From Ophelia neglecta (taxonomy: Eukaryota), in NCBI GenBank assembly GCA_965285935.1, contig OZ260665.1, positions 40,114,001-40,178,000 on the forward strand: a stretch of 64,000 nt of DNA, in the 5' to 3' direction. Both the position numbers and the translations under genes were made by a program. Position 1 is the stretch's first letter. Every line of letters begins with the position of its first letter. Positions 1 through 63,002 of this stretch are shown here, one piece after another. The notes beneath the pieces are model-generated. The model worked only from the letters and a program-made list of their open reading frames with translations, was not told where the DNA came from and did not search any database.

Positions 1-3000
1 TTCCTACAGACGTTCAGCGAATACTCCATTAGCACATAGGCGTCTTGATGTAACAAATCCCTTGGCAGCCAATTGGCCTATCAAAGGTCACAGCCTCTTG
101 CCGGCGGCGATTTAAGAGTCCTTCCACCATTTCTGATCTTAGAAATTGTCACAAGGATGTTATCAACTCTCTTGTAATGTCCCCTGTTAGGTCGTCTGCT
201 CTGAGTCTCGTCGCTCCAACTTTTGTTATACCTGTTTAAGTGTTGCCTCTCATGAATAAAAGGACATCATATGGTTCGTTACTTAAAATGATAAAGAATG
301 GGATTAATTTCAGGTCACTTTCTTGCCTTTACTATTTCTTGTTCCCTTAGATACTGTGAGAAATTCGTTTTCTTCAACTTAATGTTGCCGTATAGAATTT
401 GCATTATTTGAGGACATTTTGTGATGATATTACGATATATAAAAATATGCAAAGCCTTACCACAATACCATGGAATATGTTGGCGTTAAGCTGGATCTTA
501 GTTTTAATGTACATGTATATAACCTCTGTAGTCTTAAGACTTTTCAAGATGGACGCCAGGACAAAGAACCGATCTTTCTGTCTAACCACTGAGAGCGTTA
601 CATTCATTTTCCTGATTGTTCCAATACCTTTTACCAATAAAATGCTGGATTGCATCACTGCTCGTGACGCAAAGTGAGTTGTGAAAAGTCATCATGCATT
701 GGTGTACCACTCGGTGCGTGCTTGGTAGAAATACACAATCTCAGAAAAAGACAGTAGATGATACCTATATTGAGCTCGAGAGCGTCAGGTAAGAGCGGGC
801 AGATACGGGCGTCGCTGGGGTGAACCCGGTCTGGACTATCACAATGAGAACGTCTTCATGACAAGAGTATGCCAATTCCCTTGAAATACAATTCGTAGGT
901 ACTTGCAATCAGATTTTCAACTTTTATTGTTGAGATCACCAAAATAGACCAACGTATAGCTTCAATGGCTTTTTTCAAACAGTCAGTTCCATATTACATA
1001 TCATATATTTGAAGTAAAGGTAAATTTTTATAACATTATATATAAGACATTGTATTATATAGGCATGAAGCCATTTTCTCCGTGATTGTTTGCCACCGCA
1101 TGATCGAAATAAGAGGTTTTACCCATTCTCTAACTATCTAATCTGACTTCCGTCTATTAAGGTACTACGTATAAAGTTTATTTGAAGCCTTATGTTCGGA
1201 AGAAAACATTGTTGGAAGCCAATGCATGTAACGAGCAGTAGCCTTCAGACATTTCATTCTTCGCAGCTCACATTATATCAATAAAATTAAAGAAATCTCC
1301 AACAAATCATCCTTTGGATGGTTCCCAGGCGGCTGAACATCATGAAAAATAGCTTTATAATTGAATTGAATTAGTTTAACTGACCTTTAACGTTAAAATG
1401 TACAGATTAATTTATATACATAATCAGGCCTCGACGCCAGCAAAGCTCCAGGCTGTGTCGCTGGCTGCCCTGGTATGTAATATTATACATATATAATACA
1501 CAATAGATCAACAGAAGGAGAAAACAAGGAAGCAAATTGAGTTCATCAGATGGAAAGGGTACATTATTCGTGCTTCTCCTGTGCATCTTGACAATTTGAC
1601 AGTGAAATATAACAAAAAATAACGCTAAAACGTCCAGCTAATACACCATTCTTTAGTTGAACAGCCAAACTTTCATTAAATTTTTGCTCTGCCACAAATA
1701 AACGTAAAGACCTAGCCTTGGAACAATCCATTTTTTTTCTGGACCTGGAGAGACGACGCTGGAGACCCACTGTATCGTGGAATGCATGCCAGTGAAGACA
1801 TCATCTCTGCCACAGCCACAAAGGACATGGCTGACATTGGTGTATTACTAAACATATAACATACATAAAGGTCACTGTTTCTTTATTATATATAACTTTT
1901 ACCCCTTTAAGATGAAGTTCCTCTAATTTCATAAGCATGTGATGCCTTTAGTGAGATACTGTGGGAGCAGGTGTTAAAGGCCTAACAGAAGTTCACAGAT
2001 ACACGTAGAGTTAACTCTGAAGTACCGAAGGAACTCTAATTCACTAGAACATTAAGAGACATGCAAGTGCTATGCTTTCACGGAAAACAAACTGGAGCGT
2101 GTGAGGAATATGATTTTGTTGACAAAAATTCTTTGTGTAATATACTTACAGTTTTAAGTTCAAATAATGATGTAGCTTGTGCAATTTTCAGTTCACCCAC
2201 AGACCCCCTGAAAATAGGATCAATACCTTAGTCAGTGGTTCTGAAGTTTTAACTTTCTACTTCATGTATTATGTTCGTAGTGGTGAGGTGAGGGGATTTT
2301 CTTTTATTGAGATGCTGCTCATGTTAGAAAATGGACCAAAAAGCGTATTTAACACACGGTTGTCCTGTATATAATACATAGGAATATTTGACAATTCTAG
2401 CAAAAATATAATGAATGCCACTCCAAAGATGAAGTGCATCTTTAAAAGATATGACAATTGTCTCTACCACCGGGTCACCAGTTCCTGAATTTCCTTGATT
2501 TTACATGCTTATTCATATACCATACTGGGTCTTTGTCACTCAGAGGATTTATTTTCATCTGTATTTGGACCAAGATTAACATAAACTTGGTAGAAGAGTT
2601 GGAATTAAAATCACCACATAAGTAAATGGTTTTGCTAATTTTCATCCTTTATTAGAAACAATGTCATATCGAGGTAAACCAGAAAATGTTAAATATCCAT
2701 ACCTGGTGATATATTTTTAAGCTAGTATAAGTCCGATAAACCAAGATTCAGAATTCAATATTATATATGTTAAATTATCTTAATAGGAGTAAGTAATACA
2801 CAGTCCCCATGTATATAATGAGCAAAATAAATATCGTCCTCATGTAACTCACATTTGTACAATCATTCCCTCCATGATCAGTGTGAACGGTAATAAAATT
2901 ATTACATCCTTTATACATTAAAGGGAGCATACACAAATACGTCCGTAGCCCTGCAACAGCTCAGAGATGTACTCAGGGGCCTCACGATTCAGGGCATTGA

Positions 3001-3902
3001 TTGTACATGCAAACTTTTTCGCGGTATTTGAATGGAAGCAGGTGTAATAATCAAGTATTTTGATAGGAGTAACCAATCTAGTAGCAGCCTTTTAAGATTA
3101 AGCTTTATGATTATATGACAGGTATCCAAACCCGTTTTTTTTACGATGAACCCGTTACTCTGGGACCTGTGCGCTTGTCCTGTCAATGTCATCTGCAGTG
3201 ATTGCAGGAATAAGCTTTTTTTCATTGTTGACCTGATTTTGAGGATATAATCTTCCCCGTTGATATATCGCCCAAGGTTTCAGGTGGGGCTAATTAGATT
3301 ACAAATACGTTGTAAATACGGTGTTTGTCCCAGGGTATAATGCATTGCGTGGCGATATTGAAATAAAGAAGCATCCATGTCCTAATTTGTTGCTTATTCC
3401 GACATCCACTTGTTCTTGCGGAACTTCATAATGCCACTAAATACCGACCTTTTATCCTTGATTCCTTGGTTGTGTTTTGCTTTACAACCGACATCTGTAG
3501 GGAAAGTATGTGATAATTCTGGCTGTATCGCACTCATAACTAACTTCACGGACATTTTTTCCAACTCGGTTTACAATGGACAAAAATGACACGGCTTCTC
3601 GTTTCTTTGTTAACACAACTACTTATTGACTTCTAGTAAATATCTATTATGCTACTACTAAACTTATGTACTAAACGAAGCCCCACCACAGGCGACCAGT
3701 GACTTAAAGCTAAAAATACCGCTGTTGTTATGCCAGTATTGCTCTCATATGCTTTGCGTTGCCATTAATATTGCTAATATCATCCCCAATCCGATAATTC
3801 CCGGCAGTGTCTATATTTCATCCAAGGGGCTTATGTATATTGGAAGTGCAGACATTTCATCTTAACATAGGTTCAGGTAATAAGGTTCTTTATTATCTTC
3901 AG

Positions 3903-4073
3903 ATTCTGGAAGACTGGCGGTATATTGCCTTGGTCATAGACCGGCTGCTGTTATACATCTTCCTGGCCGTGACGATAGCTGGCACTGTCGGCATTCTTAT
4001 CAATGCACCGCACATCTTCGAGTTTGTTGACCAGCAAAAAATTATGGATAATCTAGGTCCAAAGGGTGTATAG
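3903..4073 (+). CDS. nAChR non-alpha (beta1-like) subunit, gene A: terminal TM4/C-terminal exon, copy a (upstream exons outside window)
   Basis: Acceptor ttctttattatcttcAG (3901-3902), phase 0. Reads ILEDWRYIALVIDRLLLYIFLAVTIAGTVGILINAPHIFEFVDQQKIMDNLGPKGV*. EDW..A.VIDRL is the nAChR MA-TM4 motif, and G.L..APHIFE.VDQ matches the C-terminus of the Drosophila beta1 (ARD) group. Confidence 0.9.
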   Translation: MLEDWRYIALVIDRLLLYIFLAVTIAGTVGILINAPHIFEFVDQQKIMDNLGPKGV

Positions 4074-4707
4074 GTCGTTTGTAAATGAACAACTTCCCTT
4101 ACAAAAGTACCATGGAAGTTGAACCTACTACACTGGCTTTAAATAACAAGCCGCTTAATCAACTAGTCATAATGGGCTGAATGAGCGGGTCAAAGGTTGA
4201 AAAGAAATCTAACACCGATAGTAAAGATTGCTTCTATAGTTATTGTGATGTTTTGTTTTAAGTGAAATCATCATGTTTGAATGTCGACAATGTTCTTCAA
4301 AAGTTGGGTCAATGCAGAAGATTATACTTACTGGGACAACGTTAGACCAATGGTTTTCTTTTGAAATGGACTCGGATGACTGATGTTTCTTAGAATGTTT
4401 GAATGTGCAAGCGAATATTTGAGCTCATTTCACTGCGATATTCTATCGTGACTTCAATATATCCGTCGTTGACATATGTCATTTTTATCACGAAGTTGCG
4501 TAGCCATGTCTATGTGCCTTACCTTGAGGTTTTCAAGCATTGGACCCACAAAAGCCTGGTACTATGGGACTAATGCAAATATTTTTTCACCAGTCATCGC
4601 ATTCTTTGACATTGATTCAATTTTGAACGGAGGACGCTGGACCATCATTTGCCCTCATAAATTGACCATGTTCTACCATGTTTGCAACGAGGTGTGGAAT
4701 TACAATT

Positions 4708-4772
4708 AATAAATGATTAAAGTTACTTAAATAAATCTTAATATCATTGATAGGAAAATGCTGTTTGTGTTT
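4708..4772 (+). terminator. Polyadenylation signal cluster for terminal exon a
   Basis: AATAAA 4708-4713, ATTAAA 4716-4721 and AATAAA 4730-4735, followed by GU-rich TGCTGTTTGTGTTT 4759-4772, about 640 nt after the stop codon. Confidence 0.6.
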
Positions 4773-5048
4773 ATCATTATTTGGAAAATATTTAGTGAAT
4801 GTGCCCTGCGTTCATAATGCCTTATCAATACATGGTCGACGGTATTCCTTGACGTGAGTCAGACCAGAGAAGAAAGAAACCAATTGTCAACGTAGGACGA
4901 AGAGGAATTATACCCTATGAGAGCTACCATTTACTGAACTCACGTTAGACTCTCCCAGGCCATATTTCATCATCGTGTCAGACTCCTCGGCCTTTACCTT
5001 GTTTATTTGTTTGTTCCTGATGGATTGGGACCATTTTGAAGTAAAGTT

Positions 5049-5086
5049 CTAGATTAACGATTTTCTTTTGTCTGCCGGGTAGCCAC
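5049..5086 (-). repeat. Dispersed short repeat, core GTGGATACCCGGCAGAC (probable transposon-end remnant)
   Basis: Related copies at 5785-5800, 25523-25539, 33472-33486, 33715-33750 and 49535-49544 (all +). This copy aligns with 33715-33750 over about 36 nt. Confidence 0.55.
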
Positions 5087-6472
5087 CCCGCGTGTCTTTC
5101 GATCTTTCGGAAAGCGCAACTACTTAATAATGGATTTTCTCTCGATAAACACATGGATAAAACATGAACAAAAAGTTCCTATATGCATGCTTAGGGGAAA
5201 TTGGCTTTAAAATTATTGTTACTGAACACATTCACCTGAAACATTCAATGTTATATCAGACTGGGGCAGACCCACATGTGGAACTGTTCACTCAAGAACA
5301 TTGTAATCATTTACTGAAAATATGTGAAAACAATAGAACCTGAATACTATCAGTCGAAAAGGTCCACTATTGTGAATTGCATCTACTCTATATAGTAACC
5401 TGAACATGAACTTTCTAAAAGAGAGCCATTGATTGTGTTGTGATCTTCCTCCCGTCCGGTAGTATCTGTAATAGAACTCAAAGCATATGCTATGCTTACT
5501 GGTGGACAATTTATTTGTATACTACATGAATTTCCGTCTAAGCCTGCAGACCTCATAATCCGTGGTCGGCCATTTGAACACCAGGGTTAAGTGTTCCGGT
5601 TATAATGAAACGTAAAAGCACACTTTCCAACAAATTAACCACAACTCTTGACATTTATATCCCATATAATGGAAAATAGGAATATTTCTATGAATGCAAG
5701 AAATGAAAAGTTTACTACTGGAAACTCAAAATGTTCTCTTTAGTTATAACTACATTTTTGTCTTTATTAGTCTCTTAAAAAGAAGTGGATACCCGGCAGA
5801 TAACGTCCTTACTTGTTAATCAAATTGGCCAGAAATCATGAACCGACAGTTGCAGGGCGACCAAGAGCAACCCCCAATTCCCTTACTTTAAATAAGTAAT
5901 AACATAAAATAACATCAACGAAACTGCTGGAAATTTCGGCGATATTTTTAGTTTCTAAAATAAAATAAATAGTAGTTACATCACTATAATTTCTGAATTA
6001 TTTGTTGTTGTACGAATTGTAAAACAATAATATTGATGCCAGAGTGTGAAAGCTAATAGTCTGGCTATGTGCATTCCCATATTTCCCATTTTCGGCAACT
6101 CACATGGTCATATTCGCAGGAGAATTCTGTACAAATCCAGGAAAAAAAATAGTCAGCTCAGTTGGATTCTTTGCAATGTGCTTGCCACTCATGTCGCTCC
6201 CCCATCTCGAAAGTAGGTCAGTTAATTCGGTACTACAACCTATGTGAAAGCCTTCACGTTCATTGTGTGAAAAGAAAGACTTCATATTACTAACATTTAT
6301 TTATCGTCATCCTGTTTTTTGTAGTAGATAAGATTTTTAGCTGTCAGAATGAAGAATTGAAGTATTTAGGCAGAAACAAATTGGTTCTATTTTGGATTCA
6401 AATCATCAACACGTGGTAACCGGTCTTTATGATTTTTGAATTTGACATATGGTTAGCTCCTGGGTTACAGAA

Positions 6473-6630
6473 GCAGCTGTTTACAGGTAGTCGGAGCTTT
6501 CGCTTTCTAGTCGACAGGTGAGCCCGGGGTCCCCGTTCTGGCGCGGCACTACGTGGCCCTCTGAGTAATAACCTTAATCTCGTTTTTCCCCGCCTCCCAG
6601 GAGACTAGTTGGTGCCCGACGAATGGGAAA
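6473..6630 (+). mobile_element. Decayed tRNA-derived SINE-like remnant
   Basis: GC-rich patch. GCGGCACTACGTGGCCCTCTGAGTAATAACCTTAATCTC...CTCCCAGGAGACTAGTTGGTGCCCGACGAA loosely resembles the conserved central domain of metazoan SINEs. A/B boxes are poorly preserved. Confidence 0.35.
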
Positions 6631-8286
6631 GCTATTGTTGAAGGAAATAAAGTTATCAGCGCCAAGGCAAATGTAGCAATGCTTTGTTCACTGCTGTCCA
6701 ATATTTTATAGGTAATAGCGTAGTTATAGGGAGAGAATTTGGCGGATATCTTTGTTATCCGAGTTATCTTTCCGGAAAAGGCTACCAGTGAGGCTGAAAA
6801 ATAATGTTTATAAGTGTTCCATGCATCGCTTTCTAACCACGACAACTAAATATAGTTGATGATTTATATTTGTGATGCCTAACGCATGCATATATTGAAC
6901 GAAAGTTTTTAACGTTACTCGTCACGGACACATATATTCTTATGAATTTAACTATATCTTGAAGTAGTACCTACCTGCTGGCTGGACATATAACTATAAG
7001 ACAATGACAAAGATACAGTTATTATCATATGAAAATTATCCTGAAGTAGGTTAAATGGTTCGTTTCTTGTTCTTTGTAATTTATTTTAACTATTACTTAT
7101 TGTTTTGTTCCTGTAATAGCCAATCAACATTTCCACTTCATGGCATAAGGTGCCATACAGTTCGCCATTAGAGTCCATGAAGAGCCGACACCACATATTT
7201 TGAAAGGTCAAGACATCGATAAAAGTAGCCAGTAGATGGAAATAGTTGACTTTCAGCTGGAATCAAGCATTTACTTCCTATGACAAAATACAGATAAATA
7301 AGATTTATGATGTTTTAATTTGTTGCTGGTCGCAGCCTTCCAATAGGTCTTGAGAGAGGCTTTGGCCCAATTGTGTCATGGGGTGTTTTATAACCTTCAG
7401 CATCGAGTTTTATGTACAATGGTCACAGAGAGATTGCGATTGGTCAAAATTCTAGAAGTACCTGACAGCTTGCTCGTATCGGATGTTGCTCATATAATGT
7501 ATACATTATCTAAGTAAATAGGGTTAATACCTAGCATGTAGCTCACACCATACTCCTGGGCACGTTGTTAGAAGCTAATAAATGGACGTAAATGGGGTTT
7601 AACATTAGAAGAGAACACCTACCAATAACCTGTGCTCTGTTTGATACAAAAAGTACCAGAATACAAAGATAAGTTGAATAAAGTCCCGGCAACCTTAAAC
7701 ACATTTGAACAAATAGCTGCTCTCCAACTCAGTTCTCTTTCTTTTCCTTTTTTGCGGAAGTGACTTACATCTTTCCCACATTCCAAGTTCTTAGAAAGTT
7801 TTGTACTGCTAAGGTCGGTCCTTTACAGCCCTCATCCCACCCCATCCCCTCCCTCCTTCTTTCAACTCATTATTTGTCTTTCGTCTTATATATATGCCTA
7901 TGCTAGTTGTCGTTCGAATACAAACTAGTGTTTCCTCGTTTGAGTCGTTTTAATAGTTCATTTCGGAATTAAGGAGGCTGGATGAGCTGGTTATATTGCT
8001 TTTTTCACCAGTTTGCGAACAGATCTGCACAGAGAGTGGTATAAATGTATTTTGCATATACAGAATGTTATTGATTGCATCAATTTGTGTTGAGACTCCC
8101 ACATCCTGTCCAATCCCCCCCCCCCCTCCCCCGTTAACAAAGTAAGACATTGAACGAACAAGAAACAGTATAAGTTACGTTTTCTGAAATTCTAGTTTGT
8201 TTATATTTATGAATTATTTTTGGAAATAAATACCATTGACTTAATGTATTAACAAATTAAACATGAATGTTTTTTATCATTTTCAG

Positions 8287-8478
8287 ATCCTGGAAGACTG
8301 GCGGTATATTGCCATGGTAATAGACCGGCTCATGTTATACCTCTTCCTTGCCGTGACGATAGGTGGCACTGTTGGCATTTTAATTAATGCCCCTCATATC
8401 TTCGAGTTTGTTGACCAGGACCGGGTCATTGAAAATCTTCAGGGCACCACCGATGGCGTCCTGAAATCCGATATTTGA
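8287..8478 (+). CDS. nAChR non-alpha (beta1-like) subunit, gene A: terminal TM4/C-terminal exon, copy b
   Basis: Acceptor gttttttatcattttcAG (8285-8286), phase 0. Reads ILEDWRYIAMVIDRLMLYLFLAVTIGGTVGILINAPHIFEFVDQDRVIENLQGTTDGVLKSDI*. Identical to copy a at 40 of the first 44 residues; VDQDR.IE is the beta1-type tail. Confidence 0.92.
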   Translation: MLEDWRYIAMVIDRLMLYLFLAVTIGGTVGILINAPHIFEFVDQDRVIENLQGTTDGVLKSDI

Positions 8479-8493
8479 TTTTAATCTTATCAT

Positions 8494-8646
8494 AAGCCCG
8501 TGAGCACCTGCCTCCTTGTAACGATTGGAACTATTTCAATGGTGCGGGTTCAGGTTGTGTTTAGTTACTTTTAAGAGCTTTGGCATCGGTGAGAAAGCAA
8601 ACCATCAACCCGCACTTTCGTTTTGTAGGTGAGTGCTCACGAGCTT
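8494..8646 (+). other. Long imperfect RNA stem-loop at the start of the 3' UTR of terminal exon b
   Basis: Nested arms: 8494-8507 with 8633-8646 (13/14 bp), 8520-8524 with 8618-8622 (5 bp), 8541-8550 with 8607-8616 (10 bp). Confidence 0.65.
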
Positions 8647-11199
8647 TTTCAGGCGTCTTCTGGGGCATTCTGAGGCTATTTTGGTACAACCAAATTAAGT
8701 TTGTTAACAGGCCAAGTGCCAGCTAATATGCAATGTATTGACATGACCAATGCCAGAAAAATTATAATGCCAAATGGTTCTACCCTACTGCAGTGTGGCT
8801 TTACTGGATCTTTCTCCTAACACCCTTCGAACCTGGTGTGATTTCCTGCGAATAACTTTCTTCTCATAACGTCTGGGTTTCCGTGCGTCCAATGTGGGAC
8901 AACACCGGCTGCTATTTTCCTCTTGATTGATAATTACAGCACATGTGGATATTTGTGTGCTGAAAAGGCGTAATTCACGCCGGACATACGGTTGGATGTC
9001 ACGTGTGGTGTTGACGACATCTCATTGGTTGGTCAAAAAGCAATAACTCATGATAACTTTGACCTAATTACACAATGACACCGCCGCGTCATTTCATCCG
9101 TACTACTGTGTTCGCACGGGTATACATTTACCTGTACACTGTTCATACTAACACTGACTCTTTATACACCCTGTATCTTAAAGCATAGCGTTCACGGAGC
9201 AAAGCTTATCATCACCGATAGTGACAGTGCAGTTCTGATGCATGTGATTTTATTTTCTCTGTCATGGTTCAAAGTGCTTGGGAACCGTTATAACAATCAA
9301 TTATAATCTAATGCAGTATTCCTAAAATTAACGGCGCGCTTTTCCATTTTGAGGGCAACTGCGTGATAAAAAATTGACGAACTGTATCTGGTCCATGCAC
9401 TTGCTTGTAGCTTTTTTATCAAAAAAAAATAATTATAAAATGAAAAATCTATTCTTTTTTTTTCGATTTGAAACTCGTTTTTCTATTTGCAAAGGCATTT
9501 TCAACTAGTCTGTTTATACCACTAGTGCCTGAACGGAGACTTGTTCTCTCAATGAGGCTTCGCTGAATTTCTTCCGCCGTTTAATTGATTTTGTTGTTGT
9601 TGTGTATTGGATGTTCAGATAAACAAATTGTAGGAATATTATTCTGTGTCGATATGGCACATATGCTGTGTTTAAATCACCAAGAAGGTATGTGAAAATA
9701 ACATACCCAACTTTCTTCTTATAAAAGTCCTTCTTTATTTCCTTAGCTTTGCTTTGCGCCAGCTTTTCAAGCACAAAGTTATTTAATCAACAACTTTTCG
9801 CTTTCTTTGATAACTTTCATGACCAGATGATTTCTGAAACTCCTGTCTATAGTCATATCACCTTGCTTTCCTTTACTTCGGCTTGCCATTTGCTTCAAAT
9901 CATTTCTAAATTTCCTGTTCTACTAGACTAGCCCTTATCAACCTTCCCTGAAATACCATTTAACCATTTGGCTTCACAAATCAATTTAGTAAATAAACTA
10001 AGTTCATCTAGATGGCTGGTTGACATGAAATAATCGGCATTTGTGCTGGTCACCAACATACCATTTACTATTAAACAAACTTAATTCCTGAAAGGGTGAA
10101 TGTAACAGTGGTCTAACATGAGAGGCAAAAAAAGCAAATTCAGCCAAAATGACTCTAACCCTAAACAAGTTGTATTTCTTTCTTGGTCGTAAGTTGGATA
10201 TAACTCAATCAGAAGATAAAGCTAATTATTTCTCAAACTTAGAAATAAAATGTCAAAGGTTTTACCTTAGCAGGTCATGGAATATTTGGTAGCTTTTGTG
10301 TCAAAAAAAGTTGCTCCCAGCGAGTTTAAACATAAGTTACTTTAGTGCTTTAACACGAGTTGCAATTATCTGTTCAAGCAACTTGAAAAAATACCAATTA
10401 CCATCTTATTTTCTAAAACTATTTAGTTAGGCCATTGTTGCATTCGACCCTCAATAGAAACTCGTAGTCAAAGTAATCAGGTGCATTCTTTGCGGCACAT
10501 TTACCTATCTAAGGTTAGCGACGTAATCACACGTAAAAGGCATTTAGGCATAAGTGTAGTTTTGTTTGACAACCTTGAATATAGGATATTATTATGAATA
10601 CACTATTGTATATAATGCTACAACAATGTATATTTGAATTTGGGATGGGTCATATAATGTACAGCACATATTAGGTTTTTGTCCATCAAACGACTCGTCA
10701 TTTGTATATTATAACACTGTGTATTTTGATGTTTTCAAGGCAATGGGTTTAAGGTATAATCAGACTGCTAAAAACTGCTATCTCACATGTTCTGAATTTG
10801 TTTTACATGTAACATAGATATAATTTGAATTTTCTATTATCGGGCATAGTGAGAGCAAAACATAGGTTTTAATTTTCGTTTTGATGTGATATGTTTGTCT
10901 CGTGTAGGCTTAAAACAAGTCATAGATTTGCATCATATAGATATAAATTTTTGACGAATGCACACTATAAATGTTTTGCATCGAATATTTTACTCAAAAA
11001 TCATATCGTAATTATTGACTTGGTGGACAAACTGGTGCCTCAAATTTATGTGCAGCAACTTGAGCGGGGTGAATGTATTGGAAAGGGATAGTTGACCGCA
11101 GTCGATGTACATATATTACAGTGTTATAAGTGTACCCGACTATGGTTGGGCGATGCTACATGGAATTAACATTGACTGGATTAATTCGTATCGAAATCA

Positions 11200-11250
11200 A
11201 TTAAAGGTAAACCATGTTTTGGTTCTGTGTATAGTTTTCTGTTTTTTGTC
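11200..11250 (+). terminator. Candidate distal poly(A) site for terminal exon b (alternatives near 11650 and 11872)
   Basis: ATTAAA 11200-11205 followed by a GU/U-rich run (TGTTTTGGTTCTGTGT...GTTTTTTGT). AATAAA at 11872-11877 also has a GU-rich downstream element. AT-rich background makes chance hits likely. Confidence 0.35.
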
Positions 11251-14200
11251 ATCATTTTTGGGTATAGAACACAATATCTGAAATATCCGATGTGTGGAGT
11301 TTTTATGGCTGACTTACAAAGAGTTGATCAAGCCGCTTTTTGCTTCAATTACGGATGACATAATCAATACTTTGTAAAATCGTGCGTGTTTCTTTTCATA
11401 TGTGTTATTATTTGACTGTATTTACTCGCCGATTTGTTGTTCCTTAAAATCTTTATGCCTTTTTCAGTTCGTGTAGTTGTATATTACAACTAGCTTGATC
11501 CACGAGATGACTTCATTTTCAATTACAACAGTATATAGAAAATAAGTATTAATATGGCTTCATAAGCAACACACATATAAATGTATATGGCTTTTAAAAT
11601 TGCTTACGAAGACTACCGATGGCTTTTTAATTTCAACTGATTTAAAAAAATAAATAAATAAAACATGATTTGTAACATGATTCCATGATCTTGTGGCGTC
11701 ACATGGGCAACATGTCTTTGATAGTGGAGTTATGAAAAAACTCTTGGATCTTTGGCGAGTGCCCAGTGAATGATATTTTGTCTGAGATGGAGGGAGTTTT
11801 AGTGTTTATGATTACTGACAGAATTTTAGGGCGGTTTGACATCTATTAATGCCCAGGCTGCAGTAATTCTCAATAAATTTTGATATATTTTGTAAATCCA
11901 TTTATTTGCGTTTTGTTGTAATTATATTCAACTTACTTTAAACATTCTGCGAAATGCACACATCGAAATGGTCCGGTTTCTGCTTTGTGAAAAAGAAGTA
12001 AAACCGTGAGTGGGTACCCAAGATTGCTCAATTAAATAAGGCCAGCTTAGAACATTAGAATCTCTTAGCACACATCAGTTTCCAAACCATAATGTGACAT
12101 AAGATTGTGACGGAGTTATATACATATTTATATGTAATTAACATAATACAATATCACAAGCAATGTGAAGTTGTCTAGATTTTCCATGATGTGGCTCAAG
12201 CAGAGGAACGAACAATGCGATTCGAATCTCAAGCACCACAAGTGGAAAATTGATTGTGAACATTCAGTCCACCTCTAAAGTCCAAGCACTGAGTTAAATT
12301 GGTAAGTGGGTGGAATAACTAATGCAATAGTTCAAAGTGTTGCGGAAATGGGGAAAAACAATTGTTTTATAAACACAGTTCCTCTGCGAATCATCTGAAA
12401 GACGAAAAAACACAAAACAATGAAGTATTTTCCATGTTTTGGCGTTTATTTTATTCGATTATACAGGAAAAAAGTAGATTACGGTCAAATTTGATGACAT
12501 GACAGGAAATTTCAGGGTGTCACATACGTTAGAAATACATTTTGTAAAGCAAGGAAAATACAAAGAGTTACGAATTAACCTGAGGCAATATTTTCAGAGT
12601 GATCAGTTATATGAAGTAAACCACGATTTTCTTTTAAACATCTGAAAAGCATCTAATGGACGAGAAAATATAGAATTTCCGTTTTCCTCATTATTACATC
12701 GGATTTGACTTTGTCCTGAAAAGTATAGGTCAAGGTCATGTTTGGTGGCACAAATGGTGTCGCTCCCTATATGCTGGCATTACATTATGAGCGCCGAGCT
12801 GTTAAAATAAGGGTAGAGCGAGGTATGAAATACCATTTTCAAACATGAGTGGATTTCCCCTAAATGTTAATCAGTTCATACCAAGGCTTAAACGTAAACG
12901 AGTCCGGAAAACTTCACTTTCTTAAGTTGTTCACATGCTGACTTCCTCGTGTTCGCAAATCTAAAGTAGTTTATGCGTTCTCGATCATTGTGTAAAATGT
13001 ACCAAGTGCCACCATGTTTCTGTAGGCCTAGCTGTAATATTACCATAAAAACGTTACTAGCTACAGCTTAGTGACATGTATGCAGTAAAATTGCTGAAAT
13101 ATATTGAACGTATAAATATGATCGTATAAATACGTTTGATATACCAAACAAGTGAAACTCGGGAGAAAAGACTCTTGTTTCCAGTAGGTAAAGATAAATC
13201 CATGCTAGCTCCACAAATGAATCCATCTCCTCGGGATAGTGGACAAGTTGTGGTTCTCAAACTACCGTAAACTGCACGAACAAGAATTCAACAATAAAAA
13301 AACTGAAGCAGTTTCTGGTCGGATTATTGAGAATTACACTGCATACGTGTCAACGGGTTACTGTCATTCTCGGAAAATGTTCTCTTACTTAGAAATATTT
13401 ATCCCGATCGATTGATGGTAGCATGACTAATGATGAACAAGACGAAGTTGCAAAAATGGTATTCAGAATTGGCCAGACTAAGGGTCAATGAAAAACAACG
13501 AATAAAACGATTATGGAAATGTACCAAGACGACGTCAATGTGGTATGACCTTCAAATGTGAAAATTTGGAGAAAACATTTACGAAGACACCACCAACAAA
13601 ATTATTAGTGCAAGTACAAATAAGTACATCTATATAGATATAGGGTTGTGTTTCAATGGCCATTATGGGATTTACTGCGGCACTCCGTTCCGTTTTTGCA
13701 CAGTAGGAAGTTTCTAATGTGCCATGCACGCCTTGCTATTCCCCAGCCTCTATTAAGAACCGACTTCGAGACTGTGACATTTGTCCTCCATTGGTTCACA
13801 TTTGGATATAGAGTTGGTTTAGCAGCCCTAAATGCCGGCTCGGAAAGACAGAAAAACGTCAAATGTTGCTTTCACCAATTGCATTAGGTCTCTGACTATT
13901 CTATGGACGATGTAGGGCGCCCAGCGACTTCGTTATGGGTGAATTGATGCCAAACTAATTCGATGCTGCTTGTCTGTAGACATTTGAAATCAACTTTCAA
14001 GAGACTAGTTCGGCCTACGAGAGACACGGTGAAGTAGACGTCGAACGAGGAATAACTGCAAAATTAGGCAATTTTGTCTCATTTTGGCCCGAAGAATACT
14101 TCAATAGTCCTTAACCAACAAGCAGAGATAATCCAACAATTCGGCAGGCTTTCTAATATAAAAAATAACCTTTTTATTACACACCTTCCAACCTTTAAAG

Positions 14201-43055: not shown

Positions 43056-43201
43056 AAACATGTGGCAATCCAGACGCCAAGAGGCTGTATGAAAATTTAT
43101 TAAAGAAGAATGGCTACAACAAGCTGATCAGACCCGTGGGAAACAATACGGACCAACTGACGGTTAAGCTCGGTCTCAGACTATCTCAGCTCATTGATGT
43201 G
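43056..43201 (+). CDS. nAChR alpha gene B, coding exon 2 (mature N-terminus); possible 5' extension to ATG 42992
   Basis: Acceptor tttctcttctcttAG| (43054-43055), phase 1. Reads (E)[48 protein letters not shown], then donor |GTGAGT, phase 0. NPDAKRLY is typical of invertebrate alpha1-4/alpha8-group subunits. Confidence 0.95.
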
Positions 43202-57397: not shown

Positions 57398-57507
57398 GAG
57401 TGGGATGACTATAAGTTGGAGTGGCTACCTGAAGAGTACGGTGGCGTTGATCGTCTGTACGTACCCTCCGAGGAGATATGGCTGCCTGACATTGTACTCT
57501 ATAATAA
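57398..57507 (+). CDS. nAChR alpha gene B, coding exon 4a (110 nt, loop A), mutually exclusive copy
   Basis: ctaatAG|[38 protein letters not shown]|GTAAGT, phase 0-2. Joins exon 5 to give YNNADG. Confidence 0.95.
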
Positions 57508-58273
57508 GTAAGTCCTAATTCAGCAGAATTTCTCTGCCAGTGGAAATTCCCTACACGGTTTGTATTCCCTGTTAGATGTTTATATGTTGTGCGTGATGCA
57601 TTAGAATTGTGCCTGTAGACCATAGCGCTCGCCAGACACACGCGTTAGTTATTGTGGTTTTTTCCAATCAACTCGTTAACGTGCATGAACTTAATGCCAT
57701 TTTGTGATTGATGCGAAATGGTTGTTTTTATAATGTCATGTCCTGACGCAAAAAAATGGAAATGAACATTGCTCATACGCAGTGTTATTTTTGTGATTAC
57801 ATATTATTGTACATATTCTTGAAGTTTTGCATACTTCTTTCTTCTGTTAGGCCCATGTCTATGTAGGCCTAAAGGCCCTTGGACCTTATATGTTTGTTTT
57901 TAGCATTATTAGGTACTTGTAAACCCCTGTAGTCCCAGGTATAAAGTTGAAAATCTTGCGTTTATTGAAAAATAAATGTGGATTATTGGATTAGAGTATC
58001 GAATTGTTGATACTTGTTTGCGAATAGACTAGTCGCAATACCGTTAACGGACTTGAAACCATTCCAGTAGTGAATAATTTTTTTTTTAATTAACATTGTT
58101 TGAGCACACAATGGCCTTCAGAATGCTTGTTTCAATTTCTTTTCTTTTGAACAATTAAATTGACAGGGTAAAATTCAGCGAATTGCACTCAACAGAAATA
58201 TATTAATGTAGTTTTTGGATTGATGCAACATTTGCAAATTTTTTTGCAACTTTATAGCTAAGGGTTTAAAGGT

Positions 58274-58485: not shown

Positions 58486-58595
58486 GTTTGGCACGACACT
58501 GGGCTAGCATGGATCCCGGAGGAGTATGGGGGTATAGAGGCGCTGACTGTACCTGCCTGGGACATCTGGCTCCCCGACATTGTCCTATACAACAA
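58486..58595 (+). CDS. nAChR alpha gene B, coding exon 4b (110 nt, loop A), mutually exclusive copy
   Basis: gaaaAG|[38 protein letters not shown]|GTATGT. Same length and phases as 4a, open frame, 23/36 residues identical. Confidence 0.88.
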
Positions 58596-61500
58596 GTATG
58601 TGGTCATAGGAAACCACTAAAACACTAACCAATTACTAGATATAAACAAACTTGTATAGGCAGACAACTGGTGAGATACTTCTAATACTCAAGGAGCCCA
58701 TTAATCATCCCGAGTGGAACAACTTCACAATATGCTTTTGTGAAGAATTGATTTGTAAAAGGCATTTCAACATTAAGTTTATTAATCAAGTAGAAATCTT
58801 ACCATTACTAGATTAGACTATACTTGTAGTTTAACATCCTTACTGTACATTGCGTCTTTTTATTACACGTGTGCTTGATGTATAAGTTGCACAATATAAT
58901 CATAAATTCTATTTTCAGCCATTTTGTCATAGCAATGTGTATTTCTGACCAAATCTGATTAATCGCATTCAGTGAGCATTTTTAATCATCTAAATATTTA
59001 TTGTTTATGCATTTGCTAAATATACATCAAGACACATTTATCATAAAGCACTTGCACCATCAAAAGAATATGCTTCTCTGCACAAGCGTTGCTTACATAA
59101 AGAAAATGAAAACAAACTTAAACATTTGAGATTAACCCAGTTGCACTGAATATTTCACAAGTACTTCTGATCATGTTTAAGTAAATGTTCTTATATTTCA
59201 GCCCAGTCTTTGAATTCAGCCCCGTGGCTTGGTTTAAACGATTTTGCTTCGCTATTTAGAAATTTTTAATCTGAAATAATCATAGGAAATGTGTCTCATG
59301 CATCAGTTCTGCCTTTCACCTAATCATTATCACGCGCATTAGCCAGGTAAATGCCAGACGACACTTCCAATGCCTGGGGCTCCTTCCGGTTACCACGCTG
59401 AAGAGAAACCATCGTGATTAATGCAATCCTTTGAAAAAATTCGTCTGACTCGCCAGATTAAGACATAATAAGCACTAATGTCTGTACCACGAGCCCCGGA
59501 GCCCTTGACTGAGGTAAACGACTGTCCTTGTAACGGGTAGCACAGGCGACTCCGGGGGGGGGGGGGGGGGGCTGGAGGGATAAGGGGTGGGATTCGACAT
59601 TTGTTCGACCAGTAGTAGTCTTTCAGGTGTAAGGAATGAAAGCCTCAATATCCCCTTCCAAGAAGAGGCAAAATGCGTAGAGCCCCACCCTTTTGAGAGG
59701 ATGCCTCGGTACCCATCCCAGCCCTCACCTTGATGGGACCCCCACTCTCCTCTGCCGAAAATGCTCCCTCCGCCAGCGGATAGACTGTATAGAATACTGA
59801 AGCTCGCCTGGCAGATTGGATTCCCTGGGTAGCATCACAAGTCAGAACCGGCCGACGATTAGCCATTCTTCGTATCATACGTCTCTCCTGCAGCTTTTTG
59901 CCTTCCAATTTCACAAACCTTCTCAGAAATCACATGCTAAAGCATTTTTATGTCATTCGCGAATCAAGATACACGCTTATTACCATCAGTAAATGCATTC
60001 TATTGTCTGCCCCCGCAACGTCCTCATTGGTAAATGGTACACTGATATTTCTCATCGGCAGTGAAGCAACTATAAAAACCCAAATTAGACATTTCAGCAT
60101 GCCTCTCGGTCTCGCCCCTGACACGACTCTCCATTCATCATTATATAATGAAATGTACTTTAGGAATAGTTTCATTGGCCTAGGGTTGACTAAGATTTAT
60201 AGAAAATCCAATGGAATTTGAAAGATTTTACAATGCAGAAAATAGTTTAGGTAATATTGAGCTAGTTAATATTCAACAATTGATCTGATCATTCATGCCC
60301 ATGTGACAACCCAGAGAGAGGCACGGTGATGTTTCCAAATGGGTGCGTCCAATCTCAGATTAATGTCGTAGGATGCTAGTGCCGGTACGAGAGACAGACT
60401 CGGGCCTTTCTCCTGCCCAGCAAACTGCTGACGATGAGAAACCATGTCATGCTTTAGTCACCCATCTGAGAGGACTCCCTTACAAAAGCGTCGATAAGCA
60501 GCCAAAAGTAACCTACAGACTCATAGGCCTAGTTCTTAGGGAGAAAAAATCGAAACGGGATATTATACTTCCGCGATCGGATTTCAGGTCTATGCTAAAT
60601 TCCTCCCGCGTGCGATGAAAATCCATTTATTGATTGTTTCATTTCTTGACAAACAACATTTTATAAACGTGTCATACTAATTATTGTTTTTGTCTCTTCC
60701 TAGGAGCGCCGGCGGAATACTTCAAAGATGTTTTCTTTTTTCAGCCATCGATTGATATTGTTTCAGTCGTCTGAGCTTGAGCATGCGCTGAAGCAAAAAG
60801 CAGAATGGAGTTATACAAAGTTGTCACTTGCCACTGTCACACCGGATGCACTTTAAGCTCTCAGAATCCCATTGGCTTCCTCGCCAGTCTTTTCATGTTA
60901 TTCCAATAAACTCTTGATAAAGTGGTATGTCTCTTACAGGTCATCCTATCCTAGCATGCTTGGACGTGTTTATTCTTTGTGACTGATCCATATTCCTGCA
61001 ACCTAGCTGTACAAAACAGCAATCTTTATTTTATATGTATGCATTTATATTCCTATACAAGTATTATTTATCCTCTTCCTATTTGAAATTGATTTCGTGT
61101 ATGCCTCTTTCCATATGTTGTATGACTTTAATAATTCAATGTTTTACTGTTCTTCCTTCTGCCTCGAGCTCTGATACATTTACCTAAATCAGTTTTACTT
61201 TTTTATTCCATGCATACCTTTGTCTCGTATCCTGTTTCTACTAATTGCCTGTCAACTCGCTAAGGTTTCCTTCCATTCCAGGTGTTTTATTGCATGTGAA
61301 TCGTGTCTAATGGTTTTTCATGTCACATTTTCTTCTATCTACCTATCGTATATTTAATTTCCAATAACTATAAGTCTTGGTATGACTCTTACTTAAGTAT
61401 TTGATTTTTACTACCGCATCTTCTATCTATAATTTGAATGTAGCCTTTGCTATGGGCTGGTTTTTAGAAAAATGGCTGGATGTCTCTGCGTCTTAAAAAA

Positions 61501-62002
61501 TTGAAACCTCGTGTATTTATTAAACTCTAAAGAGCTAGTATAATTAATGTGTAAACAATTATATCAAGAAGAGACATGCCCTGAAGCTCATGTCTCTCAT
61601 TTATTGCCAATCCAATCACTGTAACCTATCCAAAATATGATGATTTTTTTTCGGAGTGATCTTGTAATGTATTGAAAATATGATCGGAAACAACCAAGCG
61701 GCGTAATATTTGCCTATACCTCGGGCTAAGTTCAGAGAAAAAAAACGAGCATCCATACATGTTTATCTCAAGTTTGAGAACTTGATATTAAACTGAGAAT
61801 TGCCTCTGTTCTATAGAGCCACCCCATCCGACGTTTGTCATCCCTCCCCTTCAATGAGTTTGATGTCTTGTAAGACTTATCACCATTTTGTTATCCTGCC
61901 AGTTTTTGTTTTGATGTATTAAACTATCTATCTATCGGACGTGCCATAGCCCTGGAGAGATGTAAGCTTTACCTGGAGTTTACACGTCATTGCATTTTGC
62001 AG

Positions 62003-63002
62003 CGCTGACGGTAACTACGAGGTAACTCTGATGACAAAAGCCACAATATTCCCAACAGGCAAGGTTCACTGGGAACCCCCGGCAATATACAAGTCATCAT
62101 GTCACATCAATGTCGAGTTTTTCCCATTTGATGAGCAACTGTGCACCCTCAAATTTGGCAGCTGGACCTACGATGGCTTTCAAGTGGACTTGAAGCATAT
62201 TGGACAAATTGGGGAGAATGATGGTGATGTAATCCAGACGGGTATAGATATAAAAGATTTCTACCGCTCAGCCGAATGGGATTTGTTGAGCTGTCCAGCT
62301 AAAAAGAATCAGAAATATTACACCTGCTGCGAGGAGCCCTACCCTGATATCACATTTAATATAACCATGAGAAGGAAGACCCTGTTCCACACAGTTAACC
62401 TGATTATCCCCTGCGTAGCCATCAGCTTCCTTACTGTACTCGTCTTTTACTTGCCCTCCGACAGCGGGGAGAAGATTACCTTGTGTATCTCCATTCTGCT
62501 TTCTCTCACCGTGTTCTTCCTGCTCCTGGCTGAGATCATTCCGCCCACCTCGCTGGTGGTGCCCCTTATCGGAAAGTACCTCCTCTTTACTATGATACTG
62601 GTGACCCTGAGCATTATCGTCACTGTGATAGTCCTCAACGTACACTTCCGCGGCCCTACCACTCACACTATGTCGCCCTGGGTACGAAAGGTCTTCCTCA
62701 ACATTCTTCCACGCCTATTACTCATGCGCAGACCCAACGTGGACCGGGACAAGGCCCCCAAGGTGGTGGTGCGCACGTGCAATGGCGTAGAGATCCGGGA
62801 CAGCTATGGTGAGGGGAAGCGGCTGAGCCGGGATTTGACCTTTGACAACATGGGCGGCTTCACATCTGCGATTCTGCGAGAGGAGATTGACTTTGAAATC
62901 CCCCCAGCAGCCAGGGCGCAATACGCACCGGAAGTCATCAGAGCGATAGATGGCGCCAAATTCATTGCTGAACATCTTAAGTTGGAGGACGACGCCAGAA
63001 AT
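62003..63002 (+). CDS. nAChR alpha gene B, coding exon 5 (Cys loop, loops E/B/F/C, TM1-TM3, cytoplasmic loop); TM4 exon beyond window
   Basis: cattttgcAG|[15 protein letters not shown]..., Cys loop [15 protein letters not shown], loop B GSWTYDG, loop [10 protein letters not shown] (vicinal Cys = alpha subunit), SGEKITL (cation-selective), ...[14 protein letters not shown]|GTAAGT, phase 0. Confidence 0.98.

What the first reader, a model, noticed from the sequence alone, without database searches (positions are those of the whole stretch)
3903..8478. Duplicated alternative last exons swap TM4, extracellular tail and 3' UTR of a beta1-like subunit
Seen: two intact phase-0 terminal exons with similar acceptors. 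They differ at 15 of the first 132 nt (11 synonymous, 4 non-synonymous: L/M, L/M, I/L, A/G), then have different tails (QKIMDNLGPKGV versus DRVIENLQGTTDGVLKSDI) and unrelated UTRs. I found no other receptor exons between them, and copy a has its own poly(A) cluster. Known: TM4 and the post-M4 tail influence lipid sensing, surface expression and allosteric modulation in Cys-loop receptors. Inference: splicing-coupled alternative polyadenylation produces two beta isoforms. I do not recall duplicated TM4 exons being described for nAChRs.
Basis: partly seen in the sequence, partly recalled or inferred. Interest (0 to 1): 0.78.

Follow-up and report, generated by a model that had tools for sequence, protein, structure and literature searches.

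The report
Duplicated last exon of nicotinic receptor
An annelid worm's copy of the highly conserved nicotinic receptor beta1 gene has two intact versions of its last exon, 4.4 kb apart; both look kept by selection, so the gene probably makes two slightly different subunits, but no RNA data exist to show it.

Summary
Exon a (3903-4073) and exon b (8287-8478) are two intact, phase-0 copies of the TM4/C-terminal exon. Both lie behind one gene body, which sits upstream of the window. That gene is the annelid orthologue of the protostome nAChR beta1 subunit.

Homology is limited to 173 nt, made of 21 nt of acceptor plus 152 nt of coding sequence. The flanks and 3' UTRs are unrelated. Contigs assembled from the raw DNA runs, representing two sequence versions, span both copies, so this is not a misassembly.

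The duplication is young and lineage-specific. dS between a and b is about 0.4, while dS to the nearest relative available is saturated. Four related annelid species reachable over several kb, including Capitella, and eight long metagenome contigs each show a single TM4 exon.

Copy b keeps the ancestral protein. All four amino-acid changes are in copy a, and all are residues seen in orthologues. The ratio of 11 synonymous to 4 non-synonymous differences rejects neutral decay of copy a (simulation P 0.002-0.01). The test on the a lineage alone gives P of about 0.04.

No RNA run exists for this species, so use of both exons is inferred and not shown. This is a new variant of a known kind (alternative last exons created by exon duplication), of moderate interest.

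The parts
3882..3902 (+). 3' splice site of exon a: pyrimidine tract plus CAG. This is the only intronic stretch still alignable to copy b. A branch-point-like CTTAAC lies about 35-40 nt upstream.
3903..4073 (+). Terminal exon a, the derived copy. Phase 0. It holds the end of the MA helix, TM4 and a 12-residue post-M4 tail, then TAG. Homology to b ends at 4054; the last 5 codons are new sequence.
   Evidence: PF02932 positions 204-233, E 8.8e-5
4074..4775 (+). Putative 3' UTR of isoform a. It has an AATAAA/ATTAAA/AATAAA cluster at 4708-4735 and a GU-rich downstream element at about 4759-4775. It is unrelated to the UTR of b.
   Evidence: motifs only; no RNA evidence
8266..8286 (+). 3' splice site of exon b: a long T-rich tract plus CAG.
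8287..8478 (+). Terminal exon b, the ancestral copy. Phase 0. TM4 is identical in protein to the closest relative (L009). It has a 19-residue post-M4 tail of the type seen in related annelids (LQGT..G.L), then TGA.
   Evidence: PF02932, E 3.2e-5
8479..9997 (+). Putative 3' UTR of isoform b, up to the first canonical AATAAA (9992-9997).
   Evidence: motif only

Best explanation
The last coding exon of the annelid nAChR beta1 orthologue was duplicated recently, in this lineage only. That exon carries the end of the cytoplasmic MA helix, TM4 and the extracellular tail. The new copy (a) sits in the last intron, 4.4 kb upstream of the parental exon (b). Copy a consists of 21 nt of acceptor and 152 nt of coding sequence, and then reads 5 codons into new sequence to a stop. 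The single phase-0 donor at the end of the large Cys-loop-to-ICL exon can join either acceptor. Joining a ends the reading frame there, and the transcript is probably cleaved at the poly(A) cluster about 640 nt on. Skipping a gives the ancestral form, which ends at b. The two subunits would differ by four conservative TM4 residues, by a 12-residue versus a 19-residue post-M4 tail, and by entirely different 3' UTRs. The main functional difference is therefore probably in mRNA regulation and in the C-terminal tail, and less in the membrane helix. Shown here: the anatomy, the single gene body, the correctness of the assembly, the youth and lineage restriction of the duplication, and purifying selection on both copies. 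Inferred: that both are spliced and polyadenylated, and any functional difference.
For: Gene body and single donor. It is a pLGIC of the non-alpha beta1 type. Both exons are intact, with acceptors in phase. Homology is limited to 173 nt and the flanks are unique. Assembly: one 7120-nt contig in each of two DNA runs spans 3400-9000, one with 0 and one with 31 differences. None of the 36 variant sites falls in either exon. dS(a,b)=0.41 and dN=0.05, while dS(b,L009) is saturated. The TM4 protein of b equals that of L009, so all 4 replacements are on the a lineage. All 4 replacements are residues found at that position in orthologues: L 2/99, L 21/99, I 69/99, A 32/99. In a simulation with a neutral and b constrained, P(4 or fewer non-synonymous of 15) is 0.002-0.01, and about 30% of neutral copies gain a stop. 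Poly(A) motifs lie behind each exon.
Against: There is no RNA evidence at all (notes from other agents on this genome also report no RNA data). The exon is short, so the selection tests rest on 15 differences. The a-lineage-only test is weak: 4 non-synonymous against about 5 synonymous differences, binomial P about 0.04, with the polarisation taken from saturated outgroups. The duplication has no counterpart in any relative examined, so conservation across species cannot back it up. The tail of copy a is truncated and partly new sequence, as expected of an accidental partial copy. Alanine scans of muscle nAChR found no critical residue in M4 or post-M4 (PMC9260303), so the protein-level difference may be negligible.
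Confidence: 0.6

Rival explanations
1. Copy a is an unused intronic relic. A partial copy of the terminal exon landed in the last intron, is skipped by the spliceosome, and has not yet decayed. Only the ancestral exon b is used.
For: The duplication is lineage-specific and young. Copy a lacks the last 13 codons and the UTR of the parent. All amino-acid changes are in a. There is no RNA evidence.
Against: The ratio of 11 synonymous to 4 non-synonymous differences is unlikely if a drifts neutrally (P 0.002-0.01). The four changes are all family-tolerated residues. There is no indel or stop in 152 nt, although local haplotype variation shows about 1 indel per 4 SNPs. The pyrimidine tract and AG are retained, while everything beyond -21 is unalignable.
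Confidence: 0.25
2. Copy a, the proximal exon, has taken over as the only terminal exon, and exon b is the decaying relic.
For: The a acceptor is transcribed first and has a poly(A) cluster close behind it.
Against: Copy b has no amino-acid change in TM4 relative to the outgroup protein, although the synonymous distance between a and b is about 0.4. Its tail still matches the tail type of related annelids. Its acceptor is the stronger of the two.
Confidence: 0.08
3. The pair is an artefact or a case of mistaken ownership: either a misassembly or haplotype duplication, or two exons that belong to two different genes.
For: None found.
Against: Contigs assembled from the raw DNA runs, in two sequence versions, span both copies in one piece. 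The copies differ by 11% and have unrelated flanks. No receptor exon lies between them. The next nAChR gene starts at about 43073 and has its own TM4 exon beyond the window end.
Confidence: 0.02

Closest known systems
Mutually exclusive tandem-duplicated exons of insect Cys-loop receptors (nAChR alpha6 exons 3a/3b and 8a/8b/8c; RDL exons 3 and 6; GluCl exon 3). Sources: PMC8505678, PMC6393475, PMC13512814.
   Same: In both, a tandem duplication of a single exon inside a pentameric receptor gene yields alternative versions of one structural element.
   Different: The insect cases are internal exons with both splice sites. They encode loop D, the Cys-loop region or TM2, and they are old and conserved across insects. 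Here the exon is the terminal one (TM4, tail and 3' UTR). The choice would be coupled to polyadenylation, and the duplication is young and restricted to one lineage.
Alternative C-terminal halves of nematode Cys-loop subunits. avr-14 gives GluCl alpha3A/3B (PMC8841521). unc-49 gives GABA receptor subunits A/B/C (from my own knowledge; not checked here).
   Same: One N-terminal ligand-binding part is spliced to alternative 3' exon sets, each with its own end.
   Different: The nematode genes swap the whole channel domain (TM1-TM4 and the loop) and yield pharmacologically distinct subunits. Here only TM4, the tail and the UTR are swapped, with four conservative TM4 changes.
Protostome nAChR beta1 (Drosophila nAChRbeta1/ARD) orthologues
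   Same: The large exon is 58-75% identical to named beta-like 1 subunits of annelids, molluscs and arthropods. The exon junction ...DDYAE|ILEDW... is the same as in annelid cDNA-derived proteins.
   Different: In all orthologues with several annotated isoforms that I checked, TM4 is invariant between isoforms. These were Lineus, Octopus, Haliotis, Pomacea, Babylonia, pectinids, Oratosquilla and Centruroides.

Membership tests
Pentameric ligand-gated ion channel, nicotinic type (Pfam PF02931 + PF02932) | Ligand-binding domain and four-helix channel domain are recognised by the family profiles | tested here: met
   The large exon hits PF02931 (E 4.7e-36) and PF02932 (E 4.5e-59). The upstream exon L003:195-308 hits PF02931 (E 1.8e-11). 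Exons a and b match the last 30 positions of PF02932 (E 8.8e-5 and 3.2e-5; below the whole-protein cut-off, as expected for a 30-residue piece).
Pentameric ligand-gated ion channel, nicotinic type | Cys-loop: two cysteines 13 residues apart, containing the FPFD motif | tested here: met
   The large exon reads C-TIDVEYFPFDEQD-C.
Non-alpha (beta1-like) nAChR subunit | No vicinal Cys-Cys in loop C | tested here: met
   No CC dipeptide occurs anywhere in the translated large exon. The loop C region has a single Cys.
Non-alpha (beta1-like) nAChR subunit | Orthology to insect or mollusc beta1, as opposed to another nAChR clade | tested here: inconclusive
   The top named hits are all 'beta-like 1' at 58-75% identity. 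The next TM4 exons in the same genome are 55% identical or less. No tree or reciprocal search was run.
Alternative last exons (splicing-coupled alternative polyadenylation) | One upstream donor is compatible in phase with two acceptors, and each exon has its own stop | tested here: met
Alternative last exons | A separate poly(A) signal lies behind each exon | tested here: met
   This is met by motif only: 4708-4735 with a GU-rich run behind it, and 9992. Cleavage sites were not observed.
Alternative last exons | Both spliced forms are present in RNA | not testable with these tools
   No RNA run holds this stretch; only three DNA runs of one sample do.
Classical mutually exclusive exon pair | Both copies are internal, of equal length, and each has both an acceptor and a donor | tested here: not met
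   Both copies end in stop codons, differ in length (171 versus 192 nt) and need no donor. The pair is therefore not filed under this kind.

The most novel reading that the evidence does not exclude
This is a newly born alternative last exon caught early. Within one annelid lineage, one of the most conserved nicotinic subunits of protostomes gained a second TM4/tail/3' UTR module that is already under selection. It would be the first nAChR known to alternate only its lipid-facing helix and extracellular tail. It would also give two mRNAs with unrelated UTRs, possibly for different localisation or regulation.
Probability: 0.5. Interest if true: 0.55.

Novelty: new variant of a known kind. Interest (0 to 1): 0.42.

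Why it matters
If both exons are used, this is a natural experiment on what TM4 and the post-M4 tail contribute to a nicotinic receptor. It is also an example of how exon duplication creates an alternative 3' end in a gene that is otherwise almost frozen across protostomes. The pair is young, so the ancestral and derived states are known: b is ancestral and a is derived. That makes the four TM4 changes and the tail swap directly testable by expression in oocytes. The expected effect is modest, the pair is confined to one lineage, and expression is unproven, so it is a useful curiosity and not a major surprise.

Tried and rejected
The reads tool could therefore only check the assembly.

Conservation of the pair in relatives: I looked at the closest relative in the databases (L009, 91% identical in the large exon), two further annelid contigs (L010/L011, L013) and Capitella (L012). 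I also looked at 72 metagenome loci. Each shows one TM4 exon. The 11 apparent 'multiple' hits in metagenome loci are one exon interrupted by insertions, not duplicates.

Isoform annotations of orthologues: none varies in TM4.

Transposon capture of copy a: the flanks of copy a are unique in the genome, and only a few short repeat fragments lie in the spacer.

A paralogue as donor of the QQK...-type tail of copy a: the next best TM4 exons in the genome are 55% identical or less, so this was rejected.

Rfam scan of 1-12000: no match.

Literature: no paper describing alternative TM4 exons in nAChRs was found.

All searches were done exon by exon by reference, and no fold of a joined model was attempted.
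Full report
OBSERVATION

The two exons are exactly as described. Exon a runs 3903-4073 and translates to 56 residues plus TAG. Exon b runs 8287-8478 and gives 63 residues plus TGA. Each follows a pyrimidine tract and CAG.

The first 132 nt differ at 15 sites. My own count gives 11 synonymous and 4 non-synonymous differences: L/M at residue 10, L/M at 16, I/L at 19 and A/G at 26.

A sensitive blastn of the surroundings finds one significant match only, 3882-4054 against 8266-8438 (173 nt, 84%, E 1.5e-44). Everything further out, including both 3' UTRs, is unrelated. These are the only two such places in the 762 Mb genome.

WHAT GENE IT IS

The window is G000:C8:40114001-40178000, and the body of the gene lies upstream of it. 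In the 60 kb fetched upstream, tblastn with four full-length annelid orthologues places the exons as follows, in window coordinates:
- -43299 to -43165
- -25466 to -25419
- -9811 to -9695
- -8030 to -7030, one large exon carrying loop A onward, the Cys-loop, TM1-TM3 and the cytoplasmic loop

The large exon ends ...NEDDYAE with the donor GAG|gtaggt in phase 0. Annelid proteins derived from spliced transcripts read ...DDYAE|ILEDWRY..., the same junction that either a or b would give.

No receptor exon lies between a and b. The next nAChR gene on this strand begins near 43073 and has its own TM4 exon just beyond the window end. Both exons can therefore only belong to this one gene.

Pfam recognises the ligand-binding and channel domains, and both a and b match the last 30 positions of PF02932. 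There is no vicinal Cys pair. The best named relatives across annelids, molluscs, a nemertean and arthropods are all 'acetylcholine receptor subunit beta-like 1' at 58-75% identity. The organism is an annelid by its best hits: Capitella, Paralvinella, Lamellibrachia, Helobdella and Hirudo.

NOT AN ASSEMBLY ARTEFACT

No RNA run of this species is served, only three DNA runs of one sample. Laid on 3400-9000, a 7120-nt contig in each of two runs covers the whole stretch in one piece. One has no difference from the window and one has 31 substitutions and 8 indels, so two sequence versions both carry the tandem arrangement. None of the 36 variant positions falls in either exon or its acceptor. About 2.5 would be expected, so this is only a hint.

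AGE AND DIRECTION OF THE DUPLICATION

The closest relative in the databases is L009, 91% identical in the large exon. It has one TM4 exon, 5.3 kb behind the large exon, with none elsewhere in that intron or in the 6.4 kb downstream. Its TM4 protein is identical to copy b over all 44 residues, yet dS(b, L009) is saturated (about 2.4), against dS(a,b) of 0.41. The duplication is therefore far younger than that split.

Three further species were checked:
- The species of L010/L011: a 7 kb intron plus 10 kb downstream, one TM4 exon.
- Capitella (L012): a 3.5 kb intron plus 10 kb downstream, one TM4 exon.
- The species of L013: one TM4 exon, but the contig ends 2.1 kb behind it.

Seventy-two annelid loci from metagenomes, eight of them 6 kb or longer, show no tandem pair either. 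Of 94 short database ORFs covering this exon, none has the residues diagnostic of copy a.

Copy b also keeps the tail type of related worms (...LQGT..G.L..., as in L014). Copy a loses homology after codon 51 and stops five codons later. So b is the parent, and a is a partial copy that now lies in the last intron.

The flanks of a are unique sequence, so capture by a transposon is not supported. I cannot tell whether only about 175 nt were copied, or whether a larger, somewhat older duplicate has lost its unconstrained flanks. Codons 45-51 differ at 10 of 21 nt against 15 of 132 in TM4, while still following the family pattern. That fits either stronger constraint on TM4 in both copies or local gene conversion.

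IS COPY A USED?

This is the point that matters, and it is inferred and not shown. These observations favour use:
- All four replacements are on the a lineage and all are residues that occur at that position in orthologues (L 2/99, L 21/99, I 69/99, A 32/99).
- If a had drifted neutrally while b stayed constrained, about 9 of 15 differences should be non-synonymous. Four or fewer occurs in 0.2-1% of simulations, and about 30% of neutral copies acquire a stop. Gene conversion does not rescue neutrality, because it resets the clock without changing the ratio.
- Polarising with outgroups gives roughly 4 non-synonymous and 4-5 synonymous changes on a, and 2-5 synonymous and no non-synonymous changes on b. 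Omega is about 0.25 for a (binomial P about 0.04) and about 0 for b.
- There is no indel in 173 nt, although local variation has about one indel per four SNPs.
- The acceptor tract is the only intronic sequence still alignable.
- A canonical poly(A) arrangement lies about 640 nt behind the stop of a, and an AATAAA lies 1.5 kb behind the stop of b.

These observations weigh against it. The tests rest on 15 sites. The outgroups are saturated. No second species has the pair. No RNA exists.

LIKELY MECHANISM

The single donor chooses between the proximal acceptor (a) and the distal one (b). Any use of a yields isoform a, because a carries its own stop. Cleavage at the nearby poly(A) cluster would make it a true alternative last exon.

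The proteins would differ by four conservative TM4 residues and by a 12-residue versus a 19-residue extracellular tail. The mRNAs would have unrelated 3' UTRs. Systematic mutagenesis of muscle nAChR found no critical residue in M4 or post-M4, only cumulative effects at the M4-M1/M3 interface (PMC9260303). I therefore expect the UTR and the tail, more than the helix, to carry any functional difference. This last point is inference.

COMPARISON WITH WHAT IS KNOWN

Exon duplication giving alternative exons is well known in insect Cys-loop receptors: alpha6 exons 3 and 8, and RDL and GluCl exon 3 (PMC8505678, PMC6393475, PMC13512814). Those exons are internal and encode ligand-binding loops or TM2.

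Alternative 3' halves are known in nematode avr-14 (PMC8841521) and, from my own knowledge, in unc-49. Those genes swap the whole channel domain.

I found no report of an alternated TM4 exon in a nicotinic subunit. RefSeq isoforms of beta1 orthologues in eight other protostome groups never differ in TM4.

This is therefore a new variant of a known kind. It is plausible but unproven, confined to one lineage, and probably subtle in effect.

PROCEDURAL NOTE

Exons were searched one by one by reference. 

Noticed in passing
window 57398-57508 and 58486-58596 (+): The next nAChR gene downstream has exons at about 43073-43201 and 61974-62993, and its TM4 lies beyond the window end. It carries two tandem copies of the exon ending ...WLPDIVLYN, which covers the loop D to loop A region. 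Each copy has AG and GT splice sites, and they look like a mutually exclusive pair.
   Followed up: partly
L085:2411-3748, L086:2384-3721, L090:1576-1790, L092-L096 (annelid contigs from metagenomes): In several other annelids the TM4 exon of this gene is interrupted by insertions of 40 nt to 1.2 kb. The two sides of each insertion repeat a few codons, for example INAPHIF on both sides in L085. These could be intron gains with duplicated flanks, or small internal duplications.
   Followed up: no
proteins P0186, P0188, P0205, P0206, P0214: Some annelid ORFs of this exon carry in-frame tandem expansions in the post-M4 tail (repeated EFIDQEARIA units) or inside TM4 (TADVT repeats). This suggests the region is prone to slippage or duplication in other lineages as well.
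   Followed up: no
window 8118-8133: A C-rich homopolymer-like run (ccccccccccctccccc) lies about 155 nt upstream of exon b. Several unrelated short-read contigs touch or break here (loose ends at 8111-8132).
   Followed up: no
window 3873-3885: A donor-like CAG|GTAATAAG motif lies 20-30 nt upstream of the acceptor of exon a. It has no evident partner exon and is probably chance.
   Followed up: no
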